A stretch of 64,000 nt of DNA from Lepidodermella squamata. Taxonomy: Eukaryota; Animalia; Gastrotricha. The notes under the pieces were generated by a model. It was not told where the DNA came from. It saw nothing but the letters and a program-made list of their open reading frames with translations, and did no database searches. Made by a program: the position numbers and the translations under genes. Below, one piece after another: positions 33,491 through 47,145 of this stretch. The first letter of the stretch is position 1. Each line of letters opens with the position of its first letter. The stretch covers positions 496,001-560,000 of the forward strand of contig JBLDXI010000036.1 in assembly GCA_047495785.1 (NCBI GenBank), in the 5' to 3' direction.

Positions 33491-34618
33491 TTACATGATC
33501 AAATTATACGTGATGATATTTAGAAATGATAGAATTATGAGGAACACTTGGAATGCTATGAAATCCACAATATACCGAACGCTAATTTGTTTCCTCAAAC
33601 AAGCAACGTTGATCGGTCTATCAGCTGTTTCGGGGAATCGATTGATAAGCGTGCACATCCCACCGAAGTACAGCGTGCAAAGCATAGCAAATATTGTCTG
33701 GCCGAGGATGTAATACGAAATCACAATATGCCGCGGTGTTCGCGGTAAAACGGCCGAAATTTGGCTTTGAAGCACGAAAATCGACATCATGATAGTTGCG
33801 GCGAACGTCGGCCGATCCGGAGCATCAGGCGGTACTAGGAAGCTACCCAGAACGAGGATAGTGAGAATAAAGCTCGGAGCTATGAGGCTGAGAACGAAAT
33901 AATCGGGCTTCCTCCCGAGCTCAAACCTGAAAGTGACCCTTTGCAACTTTTAATTGGCACTTTTGATAGTATCGTCTTGAAACTTCACGTCAGAGCTGAC
34001 GTTCAACAATTTCCAGTTAGCGTTGTCTGGCATAAAATCTTGGGATAGCCCTAGAATGTAGGCGTCTTTAACTGCGATATTTTCGAGGATTGCGCTGAGC
34101 TTCAGCCTGATTTCACATGTTTGGCTATCGAACGGGAAGGCGAAGAGCTGTAAATTACAAGACGAAACAATAACGCCGTAGAAGGCATGCGTGAAAAGGC
34201 CCGTTGACATGTTGACCTCCATTCGCCTTAGCGAGCCATCGACGCTCGCTTCCATGCCGATGTTCGTCAGGCTGTTTTCATGCATCAGATCAGGCACCCA
34301 GAACATTTCAGGGTCGATTCGGATATTTTCAAGGTTTTTACGCCATTCCGGGTCGTGGTAAGCCTTTGCTACGCACGGCACAATCCAAGTGACCATGACA
34401 ATGCCTACAACTGTTAGCGTCTCGCCTACATCGTCGATTTCGCGAAATCGCTCGCCGTAGAAGGAAACGTTGATTTTCGTTGGCACACCTTCGCTTTCTG
34501 ACGGCGAATTGATGTGACGACCGACGTTGCACCGCGAATGGATGAAGTCGGTCGTGGAAGAGTTGTTGAAGCAGAATGCTGTGTTACTCAAAAACAACAG
34601 AGCGAATAAACTAATCAT
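33491..34618 (-). pseudogene. Cys-loop ligand-gated ion channel subunit with one in-frame TAA
   Basis: Signal peptide, W.PD, Cys-loop CNLQLFAFPFDSQTC, four TM helices, short M3-M4 loop, intronless. The 33950-34705 and 33491-33946 ORFs are the same frame separated by TAA at 33952-33950. Confidence 0.85.
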
Positions 34619-35815
34619 TGGTTTCCAGCAAAAACTCCTAAAATAGCGTCTAATAGTTACTCTAATACAATGGCGAATTCTTCCTACTTTAGCAATACGT
34701 GACAATAATGGCTTGAGGTAAACATTTTTTTCTCAATTAGTCAGGATTACTAATAAATATTAGTCTTACAAATGTTTGCATTGGTTTTTACTAGTGAGTT
34801 CCGGCAATCCTGTTTCTGTTTACTCAGCAGTGTCTTCTGGAAGATTTACTACAATTTTAGTTTTCGGGGTTTTCCCTTTCCTATGTTCTGCTTTTTGCCT
34901 GAAAATCATTCTGACATTTTTGAATTTCTATCACGGAACTTTTGACATGTACATGGTAACATGGATCTTGGTAACACGTAACACGCCACACGACTTTCAG
35001 TACACATTTTGATGATGAAAAAGACTGATCCGAGTCAACAAACGAGATTCATTCAATTTATGAGCTTTTCACTTTTTCGATCATTTCCTCTGATATTTTC
35101 CACTCACGTGATTCAAAATGTTGCCCAAAACGGACAGACAAATGGCAACGTAACGGTCAGACTGTGTGGCATTCAGTTCATTTCCGGGAGAACCGTACAT
35201 GATAGCTGATAAAACTCTGCATATTCGAAATCTGCGCACTTGATTACCTCTCCTGTTAGCAAATACCGAAGCAATCGGAATGACCGATCAATTTTTGATT
35301 TTTGATTTTTGATTATCGATTATCGATTATCGATTTTGAGCCGATCGGTTGATGATAGAAGTGATTTTGTTGTGATTTTTGAAATCAACATACCCTGATT
35401 ACATTTACTGGTACTTTGCCGTGAATAATCATGGTTATCGATTATCGACTATTGATTATATCGATTATTAGTGCCAAAAATCAATCACCTCCCAGGCTAT
35501 GGGAAACCGATCGGTCTGATGACGGGCGTCTGATCATGAACAACTGAGAAAAAATTATAAGAAAATCTATCACCGTTCATGAGAAAATACGTTTGGAATT
35601 TCTGGCCTAAATGGGACATTGACGCGGACATAACCGTATATCTGAGGCAAAAAGCTGCTTACTGGACACATTGACAAATTCGATTACGATATGAACCTCA
35701 TGCATGGTTTTAGAAGTCGGATGATTCTTGACAGAAAATAGTTTACTCATAATAAGCTTGATAATGCTCGATACAGCATCAGATGAAAGAGAAGTATTAA
35801 TTAGTTCGCACTCAC

Positions 35816-38800
35816 TCAACCTGTGGACCAAGCTCGACTCGCTCCTCGCATCGTCAGCAAGTCGGCCGCTGCGGTTCTGTTTTGATAAATTGCTCGGTCA
35901 AGAGGCGTTTCACCATAGATATTCCTGACATCCTTATTTGCACCTCTATCCAGAAACAGTCGCGCTACATCGGCCCACCCGGACGAAACCGCAAACATCA
36001 AAGCCGTGTTGCCGTCTTTATCTTTGGCGCCGATAGCTGATTTGCGATCCAGTAACAGTCGAACCACTGCAACATGCCCTTTCGAAGCAGCTAACATCAG
36101 CGCGGTCCGGCTATTGTTACCTTTAGCATCGGCGGAGGCGTTGCGATCCAGCAACAGCCGAGCTACTTCGAATGTCCCATACGAAGCAGCATATGACAAA
36201 GCCGTGTCGCCATTGGAATCGCTAGCCTCAACGGCGGCCTTGCGATCTAGGAAAAGACTAACCACCGCGACTTGACCGCTACTTGCTGCACGCATCATAG
36301 CCGTCGAGCCGTAGTTATTCTTCGCCTCAATAGCAGCTTTACGGTCCAGCAATAGTCGAACTGCTTCGATCTGTCCAGCCATAGCCGCATGCATCAATGA
36401 CGTCATACCTTCGTTATCCTTAGCCTCGATGGCAGCATTGCGGTCTAGCAACAGGCGAAGTACTTCGATATGCCGGGTCCCAGCAGAAAACATCAGCGCC
36501 GTAATACCAAACCCTTCCCTCGCATCGATAGCAGCGTTGCGATCTAGCAGCAGTCGAACTACTTCGATTTTCCCATTTATAGCAACATTCATCAACGCCG
36601 TTATGCCTGCGTTGTTCTTCACCTCGATGTTAGCGTTGCGATCCAGTAATAAGCTGAGCACTTCGATTCGCTCCATAATAGCCGCCCACATCAAAGCCGT
36701 TTGGCCATCGTCACTTCTAGCCTCGATCGAAGCGTTGCGATCAAGCAACAGTCGTACAGCTTCGACTTTTCCTGCCATAGCGGCCCTTATCAATGCCGTT
36801 TTACCTTCGTTATCCTTCGCCTCGATGTTAGCTTTGCGATCTAATAACAATCGCAGTACTTCGATTTGCCCTTTAAAAGCCGCATGAAGTAGCGCCGTCC
36901 AGTTATCCATTCCCTTTGCCTCGATAGCAGCGTTGCGATCCAGTAGCAGTCGAACCACTTCGACATTCCCACCTATAGACGCAATCACCAACGCCGTCCA
37001 GCCATCGTTATTCTTAGCATCGATGGAAGCGTTCCGCTCCAGTAATAACCGGAGAACATCGATTCGCCCAATATTAGCCGCAATAATCAACGCTGTGTTG
37101 CCGGCGTTATTTTTCGCCTCGATTGCAGCGTTGCGATCCAACAATAGTCGAACTGCTTCGATTCGCCCAGCCGAAGCCGCATACATCAACGCCGTCTTAC
37201 CGTCGTTATCCTTTGCCTCGATGGCAGCACCGCGGGCTACCAGCAGTCGTAAGGTTTCAACTGGCGCACTGATAGCCGCATACATCAACCCAGTCTTACC
37301 GTCGTTATCCTTGGCTTCAATGGCAGCATTGCGATCTAGCAACAGTCGAACAACTTCGACATTCCCGATCCCAGCAGCAGACATCAACGCCGTCATGCCA
37401 TTTTTTACCCTCGCCTCGATAGCGGCATTGCGATCTAGCAACAGGCGAATCACATCGGTCTTCTCTATCGCAGCCGCAATCACCAAAGCTGTCCAACCGT
37501 CGTTATTCTCAGCATCGATAGCGGCGTTGCGATCCAGTAATAAGCGGACGACTTCAGTTTGCCTATTACTAACAGCATACAGCAACGCCGTAAAACCATT
37601 CGCACCTTTAGCCTCGATCGAAGCGTTGTGATCAAGCAACATTCGTACGGCTTCGACTGATCCATATATAGCCGCCACCATCAACGCCGTCTTGCCATCG
37701 TTATCCTTGGCCTCGATGTCAGCGTTGCGATCCAGCATTAAGCGGAGTACTTCGATTTGCCCTTTAAAAGCAGCATACATCAACGCCGTCAAGCCAGCGT
37801 TATTTTTAGCATTGATAGAAGCGTTTCGATCAAGCAACATTCGAGCTACTTCGTCATCCCCAAACATAGCCGTTTCCATCAAGGCAGTCCTTCCAAAGGC
37901 AGCGTCCTTAAGATTCACATCGGCACCACGATTCACCAACAGCCGAGCAATCTCCAGTCGCAGGGCTGGTTTTCGGGTGGAACACAGCCAAACACCCAAT
38001 AGCAGCGTGCTATTTCGTATAGCCGACCTATCGCAGGAGGACTCGTTTGGTTTGCGCCAGTTTGGGTCGAACTTGCCGCCAGTTGCATCGTCGATGTCGG
38101 CGACAAGTTGCCGCACTTGCTCAGCGTCGTCCGTCTCGGCTGTTACATTCCACAATTGGTCGTACACTTCGCGGATCTAAATGCAGACATGAAATAGAGA
38201 TTACCAATTGCATTTAGAACAGAAAGGCATAGAGGTATAGAGAACTGATTGAACTAGAAAAACTGGTTTCACAAATGTGCGACAGGTACGAATTCAAGCG
38301 CGTAACAAATATTTTGGAGAACCGCCCTCCCTTCTTACTACCGAATACTAACTGGTCTCTGCTGCTCTGACACGCAAGAACCAGGCTGGGACCACGTGAA
38401 GTTCGAGAGGCACAATATGGAAGCATTTCCTCGAATCGCAAAGTTTTGCTTGCAAGATATATTTCGCGTAGCTCCGATGCTCGACGGACCAGGGGATACG
38501 TTGCCGTTTCGGATCGTGCGAACAGCACCGCAGCCTTGACGTCACACATTACATGGGACGAGAGTGAAGCAATATATTTACTAACCTGTTGGATTGCATC
38601 TTCCACTTAGCACTGGGCGAAATGGAGGCACGCAAGAGGCAGTCGACACAGAGGCGGAGTAGGCATAGCCAGGGTTGCATTTAACACTCACCACGCCTCC
38701 TCTTTCCACCACTGTTCCAGGCCTTAGAACTACGCCAGTATCTTCCGAAGTTTCTGGGTCCACTCGGGTCACAAATCCTACAAATCCTGCGGTTACATTC

Positions 38801-40029
38801 GGTACGATACAAGACTGCTCGGGAGTAGTCGTTTGGCTTCGAACATCAGTGTTCTCCGAAATCCAATCAAGAACCTTGCAGACTCTGCTGTAGATAACTG
38901 GGCTGTCTCCGCTGCATGACTCGTCGCCATTCGAAATCAGGCCAAGCAGGTAAGTTCTCCTCGACATCGAACACATTAGCGGGCCCCCAGAATCAGCGAA
39001 GCAAACGTCGCTGCCATCGGCGGCTAAACACATTTTAGAATTGATGTTGACTGGATCAGAACGGCTGCGGGAATAATCCGTCGAGCAATTTCGGTAGGAC
39101 TGAACTTGAAGATCGAGCTTCCTCGGGATCTCAGATATTCTGACTGAAATACATACATGCCACGTAAAATCGGATGCTCTGTATTAATTTAAGATTTAAG
39201 TCACTTTATCCCTCATTTGCGAAATTTCCTCAAACCCAACCAAAGTAAAGTTATGCATGATCATGTTGAATAATGCATTCAAATCCACCTCGGAATTAGC
39301 TGGTTCATAATTTAATAATTTAATGAATACTGCATGAGCGTGGCTCACTTTGTGACAAATGACGCCAGCCAACTGCGACTGCCGAATCGCATCCGTCGAT
39401 CGAATTCGTTGTCAATGCGTTGGCTCGGCACATAGTACTCGCATCAGGTAGGCAAATCGGCCTGATCTCCTGCGAAAATCTAGTGACTGGGCTCATCAAC
39501 CGCAGGAGAGCGAAGTCAAAATCGTAGAAATTCTGACTTCCGCTGTATTGCGGATGAACCAAAGGCGGCAGGGACACAAGTGATTCGCGAGAGGCTGTCT
39601 CTGAACGAACACTGATGTTATGACGTCCCAACAACGCCTTGATCCTGTTCACAAACCCATTTCAGCCATCTGTTAGAGAAAATAACAGAATCACCTACAT
39701 AATTGGGGTGCTTCCGGCATTTAAAATGCAATCAGCAGCTGTTATCAGCCATTGCTTCGATATTAGAGTAGCTCCGCAATATGAGGCTGACGTTTCGCGG
39801 TTGTGATAAATTTCTAGCATAACCTTGAACGAGCATCCGTTTTCGGCGATAAGAAACTGATTTGAACAATACAAACCAGCCATGGGTAGTCGTTCGGTCC
39901 CGTCGGGTGACTGCCCGGGCCGCTTGATTTAGGCATCGCAGTAGGGATTACAGTGCCACATCCGAGATCTTGAGCAATTACAACTCCGTAAATCAGCCAA
40001 TGGTGAGCAAAAGCTATAAGAAGAAGCAT
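35816..40029 (-). CDS. Secreted trypsin-like pseudoprotease-CCP-CCP-ankyrin (~22 repeats) fusion, copy A
   Basis: Exons 40029-39877, 39823-39699, 39644-39349, 39143-38586, 38534-38353 and 38176-35816, all GT-AG and phase-compatible. Motifs TAADC (His lost), DFAL, ADSGGP. Two sushi-like modules. The ankyrin exon has no ATG of its own at its start. Confidence 0.8.
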
Positions 40030-40182
40030 TTCGAAATTTTCCTGCTAAAGTTGAGCTGAAGCCGCAACAAAAGGCTTGATAAATGCAAATTATCCTCCTC
40101 ATTGTTAAGTTTTACGTGAAACGTGTTCTCAAGTGTATTTGTTAGAGATACAGATAAAAACGTGACGTTTGTTTACAATGAA

Positions 40183-41060
40183 GAATAATGACGGGGGACA
40201 CCCCGTTGTCGTGGGTCGTCTTCGTTACGTGTGTCCGTACGTCAAGGAGGATATGAGTGCCCGCTTAAAAAACGCATCAAGGAGGATATGAGTCCCCGCT
40301 TAAAAAACGGGGTGTTCCCCGTCAACTGTCAAAGGCCGGAGGCCGACAGTGGTAATTCTATGCAAACTTTGGAAAACCTCAGGGTAGATTCAAATCTAAC
40401 AAATTTTAAACACGATAAGAGAAAAAAGGATTTGCAAGTGAAATTAAGTGCCAACAACCGGGAGCCATACTTCGCCAAGGAACCGGTTAAAGCAGTGGTT
40501 CTCAAACTATTATCGCTCCCGGCCAAAAATGGCGGCCGGTTGGTGACCTTTCTGGCCGCATTGTCGCCTGAGCCCTTAGCTATAATAAAAAAAGCACCTC
40601 CCGGTCGCACGCCGCGTTTATCAAGATTCGAAGTTTTTGAACGCGATTGTATGCGAAAGAAAGCGCATTTTGAAGCAGTACTTTTTGGGGTATAGCCACT
40701 ACTGTTGGGTAAATGGAAAACTTCAACTATCCTAAAAATTCCTGATCCATAACACCAAAACATGCTTTTTTAAATTGAGTCTTCCAGGCTTTTCAGACAA
40801 GTAAAAATGCTTAAATTGAATTCAATTATTCGAGCAAAGCGAGACAATTTTTCTGGCTTATTAAAATCGCCCAAAAAATCCAAAAGAAGCAACTGACCTT
40901 AAAGCCAAAAAACTTTGGAATAACTCAGGTCTGACATCAAATTCCTGATTCCTTTATTCTTTATTCCTTTCAAGTTCGCGAACAACAGTGGCGAAATGGT
41001 CACGCACACACCCACACAGATTTCAAAGATACAAAATATCGAGGCGCCTCACTACTGATG
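40183..41060. mobile_element. Possible Helentron/DINE-like non-autonomous element
   Basis: 5' hairpin GACGGGGG-ACA-CCCCGT, short GT- and CA-rich tracts, internal 35-bp tandem duplication (40242-40309). Boundaries uncertain. Confidence 0.3.
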
Positions 41061-42403
41061 TTAGAAATTTAGTTAGATCAAGCTTTTCCACATATTTTTT
41101 AAAATTGTAATGAGAATTATTGATATATTCAGTCGGTATTACATTCCATAGATTCCAATACACCTTGAAGCTAAAATTAAAGAGCAGTAATGTTTAAATT
41201 GCTAAAAGTTCCAGCGTGACATTTCATTGAGGCTAAATGAGGTCTCATTTCGTGAAGTATTGAAACTGAAGTCTGCGAGCGAAGCGACAAAGTTTCTAGA
41301 AAATAGAGGTGATTTATGATCCGGAAATATTATGCTGGAAGTATTTTAAAATCCTGAATTATTGGATTTGAAAGAGCCTTCCGGCCGCACGCAATGCAAG
41401 AGATAGGCTGACCTCTGCCGGCCGCCGAATTGGATACAGTATATTTTCAATACAGTGAACGCTGTTCGTGCCATCAAATTCGTTTACTATAACGAAAGTC
41501 CACTACAGTGATAATTGAAATTGAAAAGCGCTTTTTGAAGCTTCTTCAAGGGGCGAGCCGTGACAACTGCTGGTCCATTTGAGCGGTGCGGAAGTTGCGC
41601 CTAAGACCCTTAATCTAACCCGCAGTTATCTCCGGAAGTATGATGACTAACGAAATTCTGGAAACGGATTCTGATCTGCTGTGAAAAGTTCCCCCTCCGA
41701 GTGAAGAGAAATTTCAACTTGAAAGCCGCCTAAAAGCCCCCTACCGGAAGTAAAACTGATTTCACGATAGTTTCCTTACTATTATCGATATCGCCATGAA
41801 AATTTGAGATTTGCCGCTGAACACGATGCTGACATCGAATTGCCCGCGTCAGGTATCGAATATCGATTATCGATTATTGGTAACTGATCGAGTGATCGAT
41901 TTTTCAAAATTTAGCCAAATCGATTTCATGTGATACAGAGTGTAATCTTTCTAAAGTATTTCAGCTGTGCGGTATTGACCCTGGGGACATAATGACTCCT
42001 AGACGGTACCGGTTCAAACCAGTTTATACTTTATACTGGTTGGAGTTTAAACCGAATACCCTGCTATTCTGAGAACCTTGGTACAGTCGCCTGTCGAATT
42101 GAGCTAGAATGACCCAGGTACTTTGTTTAACGGGTTTCTCCATCTTACCACGGCTAGAAACCCTTTTATTTAATTTGAAATGCGAAAAAAATCGGCAGAA
42201 TACACTTTTCATCTTGCAGCGGTCATTTATTCATTAACAGTTCTAGAAGATCGGTGTGAGAATGAGAAAGGGAGAAAATAAAAATCTCTGTCTATCATCC
42301 ATATGGCTATTTACCGTGATATTATGAGCGCGACGGTTCACAGAAAATCCTGAGTCGAAACGTGAGAGAAACGAGTTCCTATATGCAATCACCAAGTCGC
42401 ATA

Positions 42404-45400
42404 TCAAGCGCAGGGTGGGGATTTCAGGCGACTTGCTCCTCGCGACACCAACAGATCGATCGCAGCTGTTTTCTTAAAATATATAGCCATTCCTAGGGCT
42501 GTACAGCCATCGCTAGTCTTGGAATCGATGACGGCTTTGCGATCTAGCAACAGCCCAATTACTTGCACTTGCTCAGACAAAACCGCTTGCATCAATGCCG
42601 TGTAGCCACTGTTATCCTTGGCCTCAATCGCAGCGCTGCGATCTAGCAACAGTCGAACTACTTCGGCTTGCCCAAACAAAGCCGCGTGCAACAATGCCGT
42701 CATACCTTCGTTATCCTTAGCCTCGATGGCAGCATTGCGATCCAGCAAAAGGCGTATTTCTTCGATTCGCCCACGCTTAGCCGCATGCATCAGCGCGGTT
42801 AGGCCGCCATAATCCTTTGCCTCAATAGCAGCGCTGCGATCTAGCAGCAGGCGAACCGCTTCGATTTTCCTTTCCATGACAGCATGCATCAACGCCGTGT
42901 AGCCAGATTTATCCTTTGCCTCGATTGCAGCGTTGCGATCCAGTAACAGCCGTTCAACTTCGACTTGGCCATTCATAGCCGCATGCATTAACGGCGTGTA
43001 GCCTTCGATATCAATGACTTCGATGGATGCGTTTCGGTCTAGCAGCAGTCGCACTGTTTCTACTTGCCCATTCTTAGCTGCATAAATTAGCGCTGTGCAG
43101 CTATCATCGTCCTTGCTCTCGATGGCAGCGTTTCGATCAAGCAGCAGTCGAACCACTTCGTTCGGTCCCCCCCAATCCTCCCCCATATCATCCCCAAACA
43201 TAGCCGCTTCCATCAAGGCAGTCCTTCCATAAGCAGCCTCCCTGAGATTCACATCGGCACCACGATTCACCAACAGCCGAGCAATCTCCAGTCGCACGGC
43301 TGGCTGTCGATTAGCGCATAGCCAAACGCTGTGCAGAAGTGTGCTATTTTGTGCTGTCCAACTATTGCAGTTAGATACGTTTGGGTTACGCCAGTTTGGG
43401 TCGAACTTGCCGCCAGTTGCAGCGTCGATGTCCGCAACAAGTTGCCGCACTTGCGCAGCGTCGCCCGTCTCGGCTGTTACATTCCACAATTGCTCGTACA
43501 CTTCACGGATCTAAGCGAAGATAAGTATCAAAAATTAAAAATAGAGATCCCAGATTTCTCAGCTATGGAGCATGTGAAAAATAATCAGTTTGAGGAGTGA
43601 ATGCTCTCATCCCATTTTTGCTAATCTGCCGTTTCTTTTTAAGGAGTTAACTCGGAAATTGAGAGAAGAGGATTCAATTATCATCAATTTTTCATCCAAA
43701 CCACTTTTATGCTTTTTCAAAGCAAATATGCTTGTCACCGTGATTGGAAAGGCTCCTAATTGCAAAGCTTAGCGACCAGAAAGGCCCAGAAATATTCCCA
43801 AAATTGTTAGTAAAACCGACATTATCACCACTTCCTGGCGGCCCCTGGGCACGAGTCCTCTGTGCCTATGCGTTGAAACCGCCCTGCTACTAAATACTTA
43901 CTGATCTTTGCTGCCTTGGCACGCAAGAACCAGGCTGGGACCACGTGAAGTTCGAGAGGCACAATATGGAAGCATTTCCTCGAATCGCAAAGTTTTGGTT
44001 GCAAGATATGCTTCGGGTAGCTCCGATGTTCGACAGACCAGGGGATACGTTGCCGTTTTGGATCGAGCGAACGGCACCGCAGCCTTGACGACTCGCAATA
44101 AAGAGGACGAGAGTGAAGCAATATTTTTACTAACCTGTTGGATTGCATCTTCCACTTAGCACTGGGAGAAATGGAGGCACGCAAGAGGCAGTCGACACAG
44201 AGGCGGAGTAGGCATAGCCAGGGTTGCATTTAACACTCACCACGCCTCCTCTTTCCACAAATGTACCAGGCCTCAGAACTGCGCCGTTAATTTGCGAAGT
44301 ATCTGAGTCCACTCTTGTCACAAATCCTGCGGTTACATTCGGTACGGTACAAGACTGCTCGGGAGTAGTCGTCCGACTTCCAACATCTGTGTTATCCGAA
44401 ATCCAATCAAGAACCTTGCAGACTCTGCTGTAGATGCCGGGAGTGTAACCGTTGCATGACTCATCGCCATTCGAAATTATTCCAAGCAGGTAAGTCTGCC
44501 TTGATTTCGAACACATGAGAGGACCCCCAGAATCTCCAAAGCAAACGTCGCTGTTACCGGCAGCGAAACACATCTTCGAATCGGTGATGTTGACTGGATC
44601 AGAACGGCCGCTGGAATATTCGAGCGAGCAATTTCGGTAAGATCGAACTTGAAGATCCAGCTTCCTCGGGATCTCAGAAAGTCTAGCTATATCGAGAGAG
44701 CGATTACGCTATTTGAGTCGTGGCAAGTGATTCGAGCATTCTCTATTTCGAACACTGGCCCCTCTGTAAATTTAAACTAGCTATTGCCTACTTTGCCCGA
44801 CTCTGCTATGAAAGAAAATTACATACTGTATGCAAAATGTCCCCAGCCAACCGCGACCGCCGAATCGCATCCGTCGATCGAATTCGCGGTGAACGAGTTG
44901 GCTCGGCACATGGTACTAGCGTCGGGTAAACAAATCGGCCTGATCTGCTGCGAGAATGTAGTGACCGGGCTCATCAACCGCAGGAGAGCGAAGTCAAAGT
45001 CGTAGAAATTCTGACTTCCGCTGTATTGCGGATGGACTAAAGGTGGCAGAGCCACGAGGGATTCGCGAGAGGCTGTCTCAGACTGAACACTGATGTTATG
45101 CCGCCCTAGCAGCGCTTTCATCCTGCACAGAAAACTTATTAACACCATCTGATAGAGGAATCGCCGAACCACCTACAATATTGGGGTATCTCCTGCATTC
45201 CAAACGCAATGAGCAGCTGTAATCAGCCATTGCTTCGAGATGAGTGAAGCTCCGCAGTAAGAGGCTGAGGTTTCGCGGCTGTTGTAAATCTCAAGAAAGA
45301 CCTTAAAAAAACGTGTTTTTCGGTGGCATGAAACATATTAATATGAAGTCAAACCAGCCACGGGTATTCATTTGCTTCAGCTGGGTGACTGCCCGGGCCT

Positions 45401-45495
45401 CTTGATTTCGCCGCTGTGGAAGAAACTACAGTACCGCATTCTTGAGCAGTGACAACTCCGGAAATCAGCCCAAGGAAAGCGACAGCTTTAAGCAT
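42404..45495 (-). CDS. Secreted trypsin-like serine protease-CCP-CCP-ankyrin (~9 repeats) fusion, copy B
   Basis: Signal MLKAVAFLGLISGVVTA. Intact TAAHC, DFAL and GDSGGP with Asp at the S1 position. Two CCP modules. Donor TCA|GTAAGT at 43902/43901 and acceptor TTAG|ATC at 43510 join in phase 0 to the ankyrin ORF. Confidence 0.82.
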
Positions 45496-46032: not shown

Positions 46033-47145
46033 TTAATCAAATTTCAAATATCGAAGCAAGGCAGGCGGTAAAACACCGTTTAATCCGTTATCTATAGCAT
46101 CGAGACGTTCCTTACAACCAGTTGGCAGGCGGTTCAGAATCACCATTCTGCACATCGCCTGTAGGTTCATCGGAAAAAGCTGCGATACATGGGGCATCAC
46201 AATATCCCGCAATCTAGGGCTTTCAACGCCATCGCCGGTTCGCGGATTGCAATTCTCCGGGTTGAATGACGATGTCATTCTTGCGAAGAGAAGAATTTCA
46301 AACAAGCGGTCGTCCAGTTGGCTCGGATTCTCGATCCTTTCATAGGCCCATCTTGTCAATATGAGGCTAGTGAAAATCTCATCTTTAGCGCAGCACGCGC
46401 ACATCATACCAGCCTTTACCAGGGTTTCGAAAAACTCTGCCATGATACCGCTTGGGAAAGCAATGAACCGCATCCCGCCTAGATCAAACGATTCTGTGTT
46501 GCGGAGAAACAAGTATACTATACATAACCACTGTTTGTCCTCGGGGGGATGAGTAGTCTCTAGATGCGCACCGGATTCGATGAGAAAATTTGCAATCTCG
46601 TAACAATCCATGAGGTAGGCAGATTTCAGTGGAGTTGATCTGCCGCTTGGGAGATTCACATTGGCCCCACGAGCTACCAGAAGTTCAACCAACGGCCTCA
46701 GCTTTGAGAACACACACAATTTCAAAGCTGTGCATTGACTTGTTTGATCGATGTAATCAATTTCGGCACCGTGGTCTAGTAATACGCTAACTGTTTTTAA
46801 ACGGTCTTCGATACGTCGGCTATCTCGATGTTGTTGTGTTGTACGCAGTGAAACAGTGTCGACTTCAAGCCCTCGGGCATCATATAGATCGCAAGCTGCT
46901 GTTAAGCACGTGTGATGCGATGTGAGAAGTTGAACATTTGGATAGAATCCTTTAGTTTCCAAGTTGACTGTTCGCGATGATAACAGGTAACTAAGACATT
47001 TGTGGCTTGATGTAGCGCTGACTACCCGAGCGATTTTATCGGCGCCTAGCACTGAAACAGCATTATCGAGGTCAGACGTGAAGAAGGCAAGGTCGTCGTC
47101 TTCGCAGGCCTGGGCAAATTTCGCAACGTTGAAATTGCTGCTCAT
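46033..47145 (-). CDS. Ankyrin-repeat and SOCS-box protein (ASB-like), paralog of 31549-32664
   Basis: Collinear, highly similar 370-aa ORF with the SOCS box PMNLQAMCR...LPPALLRYL. Confidence 0.88.
   Translation of the reverse strand: MSSNFNVAKFAQACEDDDLAFFTSDLDNAVSVLGADKIARVVSATSSHKCLSYLLSSRTVNLETKGFYPNVQLLTSHHTCLTAACDLYDARGLEVDTVSLRTTQQHRDSRRIEDRLKTVSVLLDHGAEIDYIDQTSQCTALKLCVFSKLRPLVELLVARGANVNLPSGRSTPLKSAYLMDCYEIANFLIESGAHLETTHPPEDKQWLCIVYLFLRNTESFDLGGMRFIAFPSGIMAEFFETLVKAGMMCACCAKDEIFTSLILTRWAYERIENPSQLDDRLFEILLFARMTSSFNPENCNPRTGDGVESPRLRDIVMPHVSQLFPMNLQAMCRMVILNRLPTGCKERLDAIDNGLNGVLPPALLRYLKFD

What the first reader, a model, noticed from the sequence alone, without database searches (positions are those of the whole stretch)
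35816..45495. Secreted serine protease-CCP-CCP-ankyrin fusion genes, present as a tandem pair
Seen: in both copies the last sushi exon ends in a phase-0 donor (CCA|GTTAGT at 38353; TCA|GTAAGT at 43902), and the ankyrin ORF is preceded by a phase-0 acceptor (TTAG|ATC at 38176 and 43510). Similarity between the copies resumes exactly at the acceptor (IREVY[DE]QLWNVTAET) while the introns diverge. The ankyrin ORFs start at GTG, and the protease part has no conserved stop. Established: S1 protease plus CCP is complement/MASP/factor C-like and extracellular, whereas ankyrin arrays are nearly always intracellular, with exceptions such as latrotoxins. Here the protease is N-terminal and no TM segment separates it from the ankyrins. 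Inference: a target-addressed secreted protease (immune, venom or symbiont-control effector) with an architecture I do not recognise.
Basis: partly seen in the sequence, partly recalled or inferred. Interest (0 to 1): 0.92.

Follow-up and report, generated by a model that had tools for sequence, protein, structure and literature searches.

The report
Secreted protease–Sushi–ankyrin fusion gene pair
Two neighbouring genes of an unidentified small-intron animal each most likely encode one exported protein that joins a trypsin-type protease and a Sushi module to a long ankyrin-repeat array. Ankyrin arrays normally work only inside cells, so this is an unusual, apparently undescribed layout that recurs dozens of times in this genome.

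Summary
Both minus-strand copies give clean six-exon GT..AG models: copy 1 runs 40029-35816 (1224 aa) and copy 2 runs 45495-42404 (800 aa). Each has a signal peptide, an S1 protease, a 4-Cys module, a Pfam Sushi domain, and then a phase-0 splice (38353^38176; 43902^43510) into an ankyrin exon with no ATG of its own.

Evidence for the join:
- Exons are 79-92% identical between the copies, but intron 5 is only 36% identical.
- In 30 of 30 paralogs an AG sits directly before the conserved start of the ankyrin exon.
- Every Sushi exon upstream of such an exon ends in a phase-0 GT.
- Three paralogs have only 46-57 nt between the Sushi and ankyrin exons.
- One contig of a public run (guessed to be RNA, from a relative) joins a Sushi-exon end directly to base 43510.

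The "linker" is the array's own N-terminal cap (AF2 pLDDT 92). It carries a conserved Cys pair and two conserved N-glycosylation sequons, and the arrays are Cys-poor. These are hallmarks of an exported protein.

Copy 2 keeps the catalytic triad. Copy 1, and its twin on another contig, has His57 changed to Asp.

The first "CCP" is not confirmed by HMM methods. The function is inferred, not shown. The scan has found this family before on other DNA of this genome. I found no description of it in the literature searched.

The parts
39877..40029 (-). Copy 1 exon 1. Start codon at 40029. Predicted signal peptide is about aa 1-19 (40029-39973, ..VVIA|QD). GPGSHP stands in place of the IVGG activation N-terminus at 39921-39904.
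39699..39823 (-). Copy 1 exon 2, start of the Trypsin domain. The catalytic His57 position reads Asp (TAADC; GAT at 39733-39731).
   Evidence: The same substitution is in the twin on contig C42.
39349..39644 (-). Copy 1 exon 3, middle of the Trypsin domain, with Asp102 (DFDFALL).
38586..39143 (-). Copy 1 exon 4. C-terminal half of the Trypsin domain: D189, then ADSGGP with the Ser195 codon at 38991-38989 and Gly193 changed to Ala. A conserved 4-Cys Sushi-like module follows (38844-38587).
38353..38534 (-). Copy 1 exon 5, a canonical Sushi/CCP module ending in a phase-0 donor CCA|GTTAGT.
   Evidence: (PF00084, E 1.3e-8)
38177..38352 (-). Copy 1 intron 5 (176 nt). Not alignable with the copy 2 intron. 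Contains no AATAAA or ATTAAA.
35816..38176 (-). Copy 1 exon 6. N-terminal ankyrin cap (38176-37892) with C48, C65 and the sequons NVT and NST. Then 20 regular 33-aa repeats plus a C-terminal cap. Stop codon at 35818-35816. No Cys in the array.
45355..45495 (-). Copy 2 exon 1. Start codon at 45495. Predicted signal peptide is about aa 1-17 (..VVTA|QE). GPGSHP at 45399-45382.
45177..45301 (-). Copy 2 exon 2, Trypsin domain with His57 intact (TAAHC; CAT at 45211-45209).
44827..45122 (-). Copy 2 exon 3, Trypsin domain with Asp102.
44135..44686 (-). Copy 2 exon 4. Trypsin C-terminal half (D189; GDSGGP with the Ser195 codon at 44531-44529), then the 4-Cys Sushi-like module (44393-44136).
43902..44083 (-). 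Copy 2 exon 5, a Sushi/CCP module ending in a phase-0 donor TCA|GTAAGT.
   Evidence: E 3.3e-9
43511..43901 (-). Copy 2 intron 5 (391 nt).
42404..43510 (-). Copy 2 exon 6. N-terminal cap plus about 9 further ankyrin repeats, and a C-terminal cap with Cys 336 and 367. Base 43510 is where the contig of run X1 joins a Sushi-exon end.
   Evidence: (table 5c)

Best explanation
Each copy is one transcription unit of six exons. The product enters the secretory pathway through an N-terminal signal peptide. It consists of:
- a chymotrypsin-fold (S1A) protease domain with an Asp189 pocket, so specificity for Arg/Lys;
- a conserved 4-Cys beta module, probably a divergent Sushi;
- one canonical Sushi/CCP module;
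- after a connector of about 7 residues, a continuous ankyrin solenoid of about 23 repeats in copy 1 and about 11 in copy 2.

The N-terminal cap of the solenoid starts at the first codon of exon 6.

Shown: the exon structure; the domains; the family-wide conservation of the Sushi-to-ankyrin junction; purifying selection; and the secretory-type features of the ankyrin part.

Inferred: the protein is exported, so the ankyrin array works outside the cell or in a secretory lumen. There it acts as the binding module that recruits a target or substrate to the protease, with the CCP modules as a stalk. Copy 2 is probably catalytic. Copy 1 (His57 to Asp, Gly193 to Ala) is probably a non-catalytic protease homologue that acts as a binder or regulator.

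The pair belongs to a lineage-restricted family. At least 142 cap-plus-ankyrin exons occur in this 121-Mb genome, and roughly half or more of the 56 sampled carry the protease/Sushi exons upstream.
For: - Gene models: frame-consistent models with canonical splice sites in both copies. Domains confirmed by Pfam.
- Exon versus intron conservation.
- No start codon: the ankyrin exon has no ATG for about 98 codons, yet it is conserved from codon 1 in 26 aligned paralogs.
- Junction conservation: 30 of 30 paralogs have AG directly before that codon. All 16 with a Sushi exon upstream have a phase-0 GT donor right after it. Introns range from 50 to 1183 nt, and L009 (50), L012 (57) and L068 (about 46) leave no room for a separate gene end and start.
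- No AATAAA or ATTAAA in intron 5 of either copy.
- Joined contig: a contig of run X1 (depth 9.2) places base 43510 next to 22 letters that continue a Sushi exon in frame (..GSCVFSGQRRP|I..). The intron is therefore absent. This joint is not listed for the DNA-like run X2. No joined form was found in this genome's own DNA for the commonest anchor sequences.
- Selection: dN/dS between the copies is 0.18 for the protease and 0.38 for the cap. pN/pS in the array is 0.23-0.24 against the twin on C42.
- Secretory hallmarks: (-3,-1) signal-peptide sites and no other hydrophobic 19-mer in copy 2. Two N-x-S/T sequons and a Cys pair in the cap are kept in about 25 of 26 paralogs. A C-terminal-cap Cys pair is present in most paralogs and lost on both sides in copy 1. 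Array Cys content is 0.49%, against 3.8% in the neighbouring cytosolic ANK-SOCS ORF. Two paralogs keep only the signal-peptide-like exon upstream of the ankyrin exon (L035, L053).
- Structure: AF2 model of copy 2 exon 6 has pLDDT 91.8, and 354 of 368 columns align to ankyrin-B (TM 0.83).
- Catalytic residues are intact in most paralogs: H 9/9, D 13/13, S 25/26, D189 22/26.
Against: - No RNA of this organism itself was available. X1 is only guessed to be RNA and comes from another strain or species: its 22 joint letters are absent from this genome. The joined contig could therefore be an intron-less DNA copy, which would still argue for one reading frame.
- Signal peptide and topology rest on simple rules, not on SignalP or DeepTMHMM.
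- A stop lies 3-4 codons past each exon-5 donor, so an intron-retaining protease-only isoform is possible.
- The protease lacks the Ile16 (IVGG) N-terminus across the family, so its activity and mode of activation are uncertain.
- There is no evidence for any target. No diversifying selection was seen in the one close comparison.
Confidence: 0.78

Rival explanations
1. There are two genes per locus. A secreted protease-CCP gene ends at the stop a few codons past the exon-5 'donor'. A separate cytosolic ankyrin gene has its mRNA start, or is trans-spliced to a leader that donates an AUG, at the TTAG acceptor.
For: A stop follows each donor after 3-4 codons. The acceptor is a bare AG that could also take a spliced leader. 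No RNA of this organism was seen.
Against: The ankyrin exon lacks an ATG for about 98 conserved codons. The gap is only 46-57 nt in three paralogs. The read-through tail is not conserved. Intron 5 has no poly(A) signal. The cap keeps glycosylation sequons and Cys pairs that have no use in the cytosol. The X1 contig joins Sushi to ankyrin.
Confidence: 0.07
2. The fusion gene is real, but the product is not released. It stays in a secretory-pathway compartment (granule, lysosome-like or extrusive organelle) or on the cell surface through partners. Alternatively, both a fused and a protease-only isoform are made by intron-5 retention.
For: Nothing tested here tells release apart from luminal retention. 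Early stops in intron 5 allow a short isoform.
Against: There is no KDEL-type tail, no C-terminal hydrophobic or GPI-like tail and no transmembrane segment.
Confidence: 0.12
3. These are decaying or artefactual reading frames: dead duplicates with no function, or a mis-assembled repeat.
For: Copy 1 has lost the catalytic His. The twin of copy 2 on contig C42 is broken.
Against: Both window copies have intact reading frames over 3.7 and 2.4 kb. dN/dS is 0.18-0.38 and 0.23 in the array. The DNA-like run X2 covers the region. The His-to-Asp change is shared by two diverged copies.
Confidence: 0.03

Closest known systems
Complement and clotting mosaic proteases with CCP modules (MASP, C1r/C1s, horseshoe-crab factor C; haptoglobin as a dead-protease relative)
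   Same: Secreted S1A protease domain adjacent to Sushi/CCP modules. Recognition is delegated to non-catalytic modules. Dead-protease members exist, like copy 1.
   Different: In those proteins the CCPs precede the protease, and CUB, EGF or lectin modules do the recognition. Here the CCP follows the protease, the recognition candidate is an ankyrin array, and the IVGG activation N-terminus is replaced by GPGS. It is not a member of that family.
Latrotoxins of widow spiders (papers found, e.g. PMC11449929, PMC4058007)
   Same: The best-known animal proteins in which a long ankyrin array acts outside the producing cell.
   Different: Latrotoxins have an N-terminal helical pore-forming part, no protease, no Sushi module and no classical signal peptide. 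No sequence relation was found here.
Cytoskeletal ankyrins (AnkB/AnkR) and designed ankyrin repeat proteins (DARPins)
   Same: The exon-6 model superposes on them over its whole length. Variability between repeats sits at the same positions that are randomised in DARPins: 2, 3, 5, 13 and 14, with 10 and 16 also variable here (the DARPin positions are from my own knowledge).
   Different: Those are cytosolic or engineered. This family has TALM instead of TPLH, Cys-stapled glycosylation-type caps and a signal peptide.
Repeat-protein recognition repertoires outside the cell (lamprey VLRs, LRR-based)
   Same: Functional analogy only: many germline copies of a solenoid binder with variable surface positions, apparently exported.
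   Different: Different fold, no somatic assembly shown, and no immune role shown.

Membership tests
Peptidase S1A (chymotrypsin fold) | Match to the Pfam Trypsin profile over its length | tested here: met
   Exons 2, 3 and 4 match profile positions 23-46, 51/52-131 and 139-220 in both copies. The best PDB sequence hits are chymotrypsin, HGFA and kallikrein.
Peptidase S1A (chymotrypsin fold) | Catalytic triad His57-Asp102-Ser195 | tested here: met
   Copy 2 has TAAHC, DFALL and GDSGGP. Copy 1 does not meet this feature: His57 is Asp and Gly193 is Ala. Most paralogs are intact.
Peptidase S1A (chymotrypsin fold) | Zymogen activation that creates an Ile16-Val-Gly-Gly N-terminus | tested here: not met
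   GPGS[HQ]P occupies that place with chymotrypsinogen-like spacing in both copies and in 11 paralogs. The preceding residue is R, K, T or S.
Sushi/CCP/SCR domain | Pfam PF00084 above the gathering score, with four Cys and the conserved Trp | tested here: met
   Exon 5 scores 35.5 and 37.4 bits against a cut-off of 20.7. C1, C27, C41, W47 and C53 are invariant in 23 paralogs.
Sushi/CCP/SCR domain | The same features for the first module (tail of exon 4) | tested here: inconclusive
   Four invariant Cys but no Trp. No Pfam hit. The PDB profile search gives only E 0.017 or worse to factor H. hhalign against the exon-5 profile gives probability 0.6%. The AF2 model has pLDDT 49 and is unusable. 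The language-model feature search gives 0.95 to Sushi clusters, with 69 of 100 hits.
Ankyrin repeat arrays | 33-residue repeats matching the Pfam Ank families and forming a helix-turn-helix solenoid | tested here: met
   Ank_2 E 5e-145 and 2e-66. Exact 33-aa spacing of 20 and 6 units. AF2 pLDDT 91.8 and TM 0.83 to AnkB.
MASP / C1r / C1s / factor C type proteases | CUB-EGF or lectin modules, with CCP modules N-terminal to the protease domain | tested here: not met
   Exon 1 runs directly from the signal peptide into the protease. There are no other Pfam domains, and the CCP lies C-terminal.
Latrotoxins | N-terminal latrotoxin wing/body domain before the ankyrin array | tested here: not met
   The only domains upstream of the array are Trypsin and Sushi. 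The cap has no homolog outside this genome.
Secreted glycoprotein (class, not family) | Cleavable signal peptide, no membrane span, glycosylation and disulfides actually present | not testable with these tools
   Indirect evidence only: hydrophobic N-terminus with V-x-A sites, no other strong hydrophobic window, conserved sequons and Cys pairs. SignalP, DeepTMHMM and wet tests were not available.

The most novel reading that the evidence does not exclude
The 140-plus signal-peptide / Sushi / ankyrin genes of this genome form an extracellular recognition repertoire built on ankyrin solenoids (natural DARPin-like binders). The protease-bearing members, such as this pair, are its effector arm. 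That would make it a humoral recognition-plus-proteolysis system that uses a fold thought to be confined to the cell interior. The active and dead neighbours might work as enzyme and regulator.
Probability: 0.25. Interest if true: 0.9.

Novelty: new variant of a known kind. Interest (0 to 1): 0.72.

Why it matters
Ankyrin repeats are among the commonest binding scaffolds in eukaryotes, but they are treated as intracellular. Engineered versions (DARPins) work well outside cells, yet natural secreted arrays are almost unknown apart from latrotoxins.

A large, selectively maintained animal family would show that evolution has used this scaffold extracellularly. The family puts ankyrin arrays behind a signal peptide, staples their caps with cysteines, keeps glycosylation sites and often welds a serine protease to them. 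It would be a new type of mosaic protease whose specificity could be set by a repeat array.

It also offers natural, disulfide-capped, Cys-free ankyrin frameworks for protein engineering.

The proposal is directly testable by RT-PCR, secretome proteomics and recombinant expression.

Tried and rejected
- Homologs of the cap. A word-indexed search with the 786-aa exon (region 1-100) found only two generic ankyrin proteins. The search with the 95-aa cap alone found nothing. A profile of 26 caps against 1.84 billion representatives gave no real hit; the best was E 3e-6, in short repeat-like stretches. I therefore could not test whether the architecture exists elsewhere.
- Metagenome scans. One pattern matched only a spliced Sushi-to-cap junction and one matched the cap start. 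Both scans returned nothing.
- Exact-product look-up of an exon-4 ORF: not on record.
- The 22 joint letters of the X1 contig are absent from this genome at up to 3 mismatches. X1 is therefore not this strain.
The shorter exact one found no intron-less copy.
- Fold of the first 4-Cys module. The AF2 model was too poor to search, and hhalign against Sushi was negative.
- Diversifying selection on the binding positions. pN/pS is 0.24 at hypervariable positions and 0.23 at framework positions between copy 1 and its twin, so there is no signal.
- The organism could not be identified with the tools.
- SL trans-splicing was not tested.
Full report
**What is there**

The region 35816-45495 holds two head-to-tail genes on the minus strand. 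Reading the sequence and joining exons by script gives two six-exon models with canonical GT..AG at every intron and no internal stop.
- Copy 1: 40029-39877, 39823-39699, 39644-39349, 39143-38586, 38534-38353, 38176-35816 (1224 aa).
- Copy 2: 45495-45355, 45301-45177, 45122-44827, 44686-44135, 44083-43902, 43510-42404 (800 aa).
- Introns 1, 2 and 4 are 51-54 nt in both copies, the usual intron size here. Intron 3 is 205/140 nt and intron 5 is 176/391 nt.

Pfam finds Trypsin spread over exons 2-4, Sushi in exon 5 and many ankyrin repeats in exon 6. The tail of exon 4 holds a further conserved 4-Cys module that Pfam does not recognise.

**Is the Sushi-to-ankyrin join real?**

Several independent lines say yes.
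1. Between the two copies, exons 2-5 are 79-92% identical and the first 285 nt of exon 6 are 85% identical. Intron 5 is 36% identical, which means unalignable. Identity resumes at the acceptor.
2. Exon 6 has no ATG for about 98 codons. The "GTG start" is only the ORF-listing rule. Yet its protein is conserved from its first codon.
3. This genome (121 Mb, 151 contigs) contains at least 142 matches to the first 95 residues of exon 6.
   - In all 30 best paralogs an AG lies directly before the conserved [IV]REVYEQLWNVT start.
   - In all 16 that have a Sushi exon within 1.5 kb upstream, that exon ends in a phase-0 GT donor.
   - The intron is 50 nt in L009, 57 nt in L012 and about 46 nt in L068. 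That leaves no room for a gene end plus a promoter.
   - The peptide that read-through of the donor would add varies from 2 to 54 residues, so no stop position is conserved.
4. Neither intron 5 contains AATAAA or ATTAAA.
5. Laying two public runs on 38040-44039 gave, in run X1, a contig (depth 9.2) that ends exactly at 43510, the first base of copy 2's exon 6.
   - After 22 intervening letters it continues at 38372 inside a Sushi exon.
   - Read on the minus strand, the 22 letters continue the Sushi frame as ..GSCVFSGQRRP and are followed directly by the I of IREVY. The family's typical "..QRRP" exon end is thus fused to the ankyrin exon with the intron gone.
   - The joint is not listed for X2, the DNA-like run that holds 80% of the stretch's words.

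Caveats on line 5:
- X1 is only guessed to be RNA.
- Its 22 letters do not occur in this genome, so it comes from another strain or species or an unassembled paralog.
- If X1 is DNA, the contig is an intron-less copy. That would still show one continuous reading frame.
- No joined form exists in this genome's own DNA for the commonest anchors.

I put the single-gene reading at about 0.85-0.9.

**What the ankyrin exon is**

The "linker" of the finding is not a linker.
- An AlphaFold model of copy 2's exon-6 protein, built on 15 paralogs, has mean pLDDT 91.8. Helices start at residue 2.
- The model superposes on ankyrin-B/ankyrin-R over 354 of 368 columns, TM 0.83.

The exon boundary is therefore the domain boundary. 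About seven residues separate the last Sushi cysteine from the N-terminal capping repeats of the solenoid.

Copy 1 has 20 perfectly spaced 33-residue units plus caps. Copy 2 has a 42-residue first unit (a 9-residue insertion of low model confidence) and six regular ones plus caps. At the DNA level the arrays are 99-nt tandem repeats, with a 396-nt higher-order unit in copy 1.

Between repeats the framework (T6, A7, L8, A11, A12, R21-L24, D25, R26, A28) is nearly fixed. Positions 2, 3, 5, 10, 13, 14 and 16 carry most of the variation. From my own knowledge, these are the surface positions that bind ligands in ankyrin proteins and are randomised in DARPins.

**Signs that the array is made for the secretory pathway**
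- Both proteins start with a hydrophobic stretch followed by V-x-A|Q. The only other window near transmembrane-like hydrophobicity is an Ala/Leu-rich ankyrin stretch in copy 1. There is no hydrophobic or KDEL-type C-terminus.
- In 26 aligned caps, two N-x-S/T sequons (N10 and N55) and two cysteines (C48 and C65) are kept in about 25 of 26, while the middle residue of each sequon varies.
- Most paralogs also have a cysteine pair in the C-terminal cap (AIC ... SSC-end). Copy 1 has lost both members. Copy 2 lacks the first (AIY for AIC) and has a Cys elsewhere in the last repeat.
- Outside the caps the arrays are almost free of cysteine: 0 in 515 residues in six long arrays, and 0.49% overall. 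The single-exon ANK-SOCS-box ORF next door has 3.8%.
- The Sushi exon carries four sequons in 60 residues.
- Two paralogs (L035, L053) have an exon resembling the signal-peptide exon 1, with the same phase-0 end, upstream of the ankyrin exon and nothing recognisable between.

None of this proves secretion, but together it is hard to reconcile with a cytosolic protein.

**The protease**

The domain is a chymotrypsin-fold S1A protease.
- Copy 2 has His57, Asp102, Ser195 and Asp189, so trypsin-like specificity.
- Copy 1 has Asp in place of His57 and Ala in place of Gly193. The same His-to-Asp change is present in its diverged twin on contig C42. It is therefore real and has been kept.
- Across paralogs the triad is intact wherever the sampled DNA covers it: H 9/9, D 13/13, S 25/26, D189 22/26.
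- dN/dS between the two copies is 0.18 over the protease.
- The whole family has GPGS[HQ]P where chymotrypsinogen has IVNG, with the same spacing to the PW motif. The residue before it is not consistently basic. Classical zymogen activation through an Ile16 N-terminus therefore cannot apply. How, or whether, the enzyme is switched on is open.

**The first "CCP"**

The module is strongly conserved, with 18 invariant columns including four Cys, but the Sushi Trp is missing. The tests gave:
- Pfam: no hit.
- Profile search of PDB sequences: factor H and DAF only at E 0.017-0.5.
- hhalign against the exon-5 Sushi profile: probability 0.6%.
- AF2: pLDDT 49, unusable.
- Language-model feature search: Sushi clusters on top at 0.95, with 69 of 100 hits.

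I call it Sushi-like, unconfirmed.

**Family and neighbourhood**

Among 56 sampled cap-plus-ankyrin loci, about 33 have Sushi or protease exons upstream on the same strand. About 28 of these include trypsin-domain exons, and some have two to four CCP exons. This agrees with earlier notes of this scan on other pieces of the same genome, which counted about forty protease-bearing copies and well over a hundred Sushi-ankyrin genes. Those follow-ups all lacked RNA evidence. The X1 contig is the first, still weak, piece of it.

The pair recurs on contig C42 (L002, L003):
- The copy-1 twin differs at pS about 0.05-0.07 and has an array about two repeats shorter (721 against 786 aa).
- The copy-2 twin is broken: a frame change in exon 4, Ser195 replaced, and the 5' exons not found.
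- Between copy 1 and its twin, pN/pS is 0.23-0.24 in both variable and framework positions. That means purifying selection, with no sign of diversifying selection.

**How it probably works**

Shown:
- one gene per copy;
- the domain order signal peptide, protease, 4-Cys module, Sushi, ankyrin solenoid;
- selective maintenance of the genes.

Inferred (about 0.75): the protein is exported and the array is extracellular or luminal.

Inferred (about 0.4): the array binds a target and brings the Arg/Lys-specific protease to it, with the CCP modules as a spacer. Copy 1 would then act as a non-catalytic binder or regulator, like other serine-protease homologues. Immune, digestive, venom or symbiont-control roles are all open.

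**Comparison with what is known**

The parts are ordinary, but I found the combination nowhere. The cap has no relative in the two large protein libraries. Full-text searches for trypsin/CCP/ankyrin or secreted/extracellular ankyrin proteins returned only latrotoxin papers and unrelated work.
- It is not a MASP/factor C-type protease, because the module order and content differ.
- It is not a latrotoxin.

I rate it a new variant of a known kind: a mosaic secreted serine protease with a recognition module of a type not known in that role.

Limits of this judgement:
- The organism's own lineage is not represented in the libraries.
- InterPro could not be queried.
- The function is untested.

Noticed in passing
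window 39921-39904 and 45399-45382 (exon 1 of both copies); paralogs in L031-L061: The whole family has GPGS[HQ]P in the place of the IVGG/IVNG activation N-terminus, with chymotrypsinogen-like spacing. The preceding residue is not consistently Arg or Lys. Classical zymogen activation cannot apply.
   Followed up: partly
G000:C42:202571-210600 (L002, L003, L071, L072): A second copy of the whole tandem pair lies on another contig. The copy-1 twin is intact, shares His57-to-Asp, differs at pS about 0.05-0.07 and has an array about two repeats shorter. The copy-2 twin is broken: a frame change in exon 4, Ser195 replaced, and 5' exons not found. It may be a diverged haplotype or a segmental duplication.
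   Followed up: partly
window exons 4-5 of both copies (38353-38844 and 43902-44393): Synonymous divergence between the two copies is mosaic: dS 0.59 in the protease, 0.34 in the cap, but only 0.09-0.12 in the two Cys modules. This suggests gene conversion between the neighbours.
   Followed up: no
L035 (G000:C4:1789449-1795230) and L053 (G000:C4:1768066-1771835): These family members have only an exon resembling the signal-peptide exon 1 (phase-0 end) recognisable upstream of the ankyrin exon. They may be signal peptide plus ankyrin array without protease or Sushi.
   Followed up: partly
window 42404-42520 and 35816-35930 (C-terminal caps): Most paralogs end with a cap carrying two Cys (AIC ... 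SSC-end). Copy 1 has lost both, and copy 2 uses a Cys at another place in the last repeat. This co-loss fits a disulfide pair.
   Followed up: partly
window 40240-40640: The stretch between the two genes has very high contig depth in the DNA-like run (up to about 2400 against about 100-200 nearby). It also holds a 35-nt tandem duplication at 40242-40309. It is probably a high-copy repeat or transposon fragment. The two ORFs there have no Pfam hit.
   Followed up: partly
window 35810-35825: Copy 1's stop codon TGA is immediately followed by GTGAGT, a good donor consensus. A further downstream exon cannot be excluded. Copy 2 has nothing similar.
   Followed up: no
window 46033-47145 (-) and 33950-34705 (-): Flanking genes. 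One is a single-exon ankyrin + SOCS-box ORF (Cys-rich, no sequons, a cytosolic type). The other is an ORF with a neurotransmitter-gated ion-channel ligand-binding domain.
   Followed up: partly
window 36314-37853: Copy 1's array shows a 396-nt (four-repeat) higher-order period at about 74% identity. This suggests growth by multi-repeat duplication.
   Followed up: no
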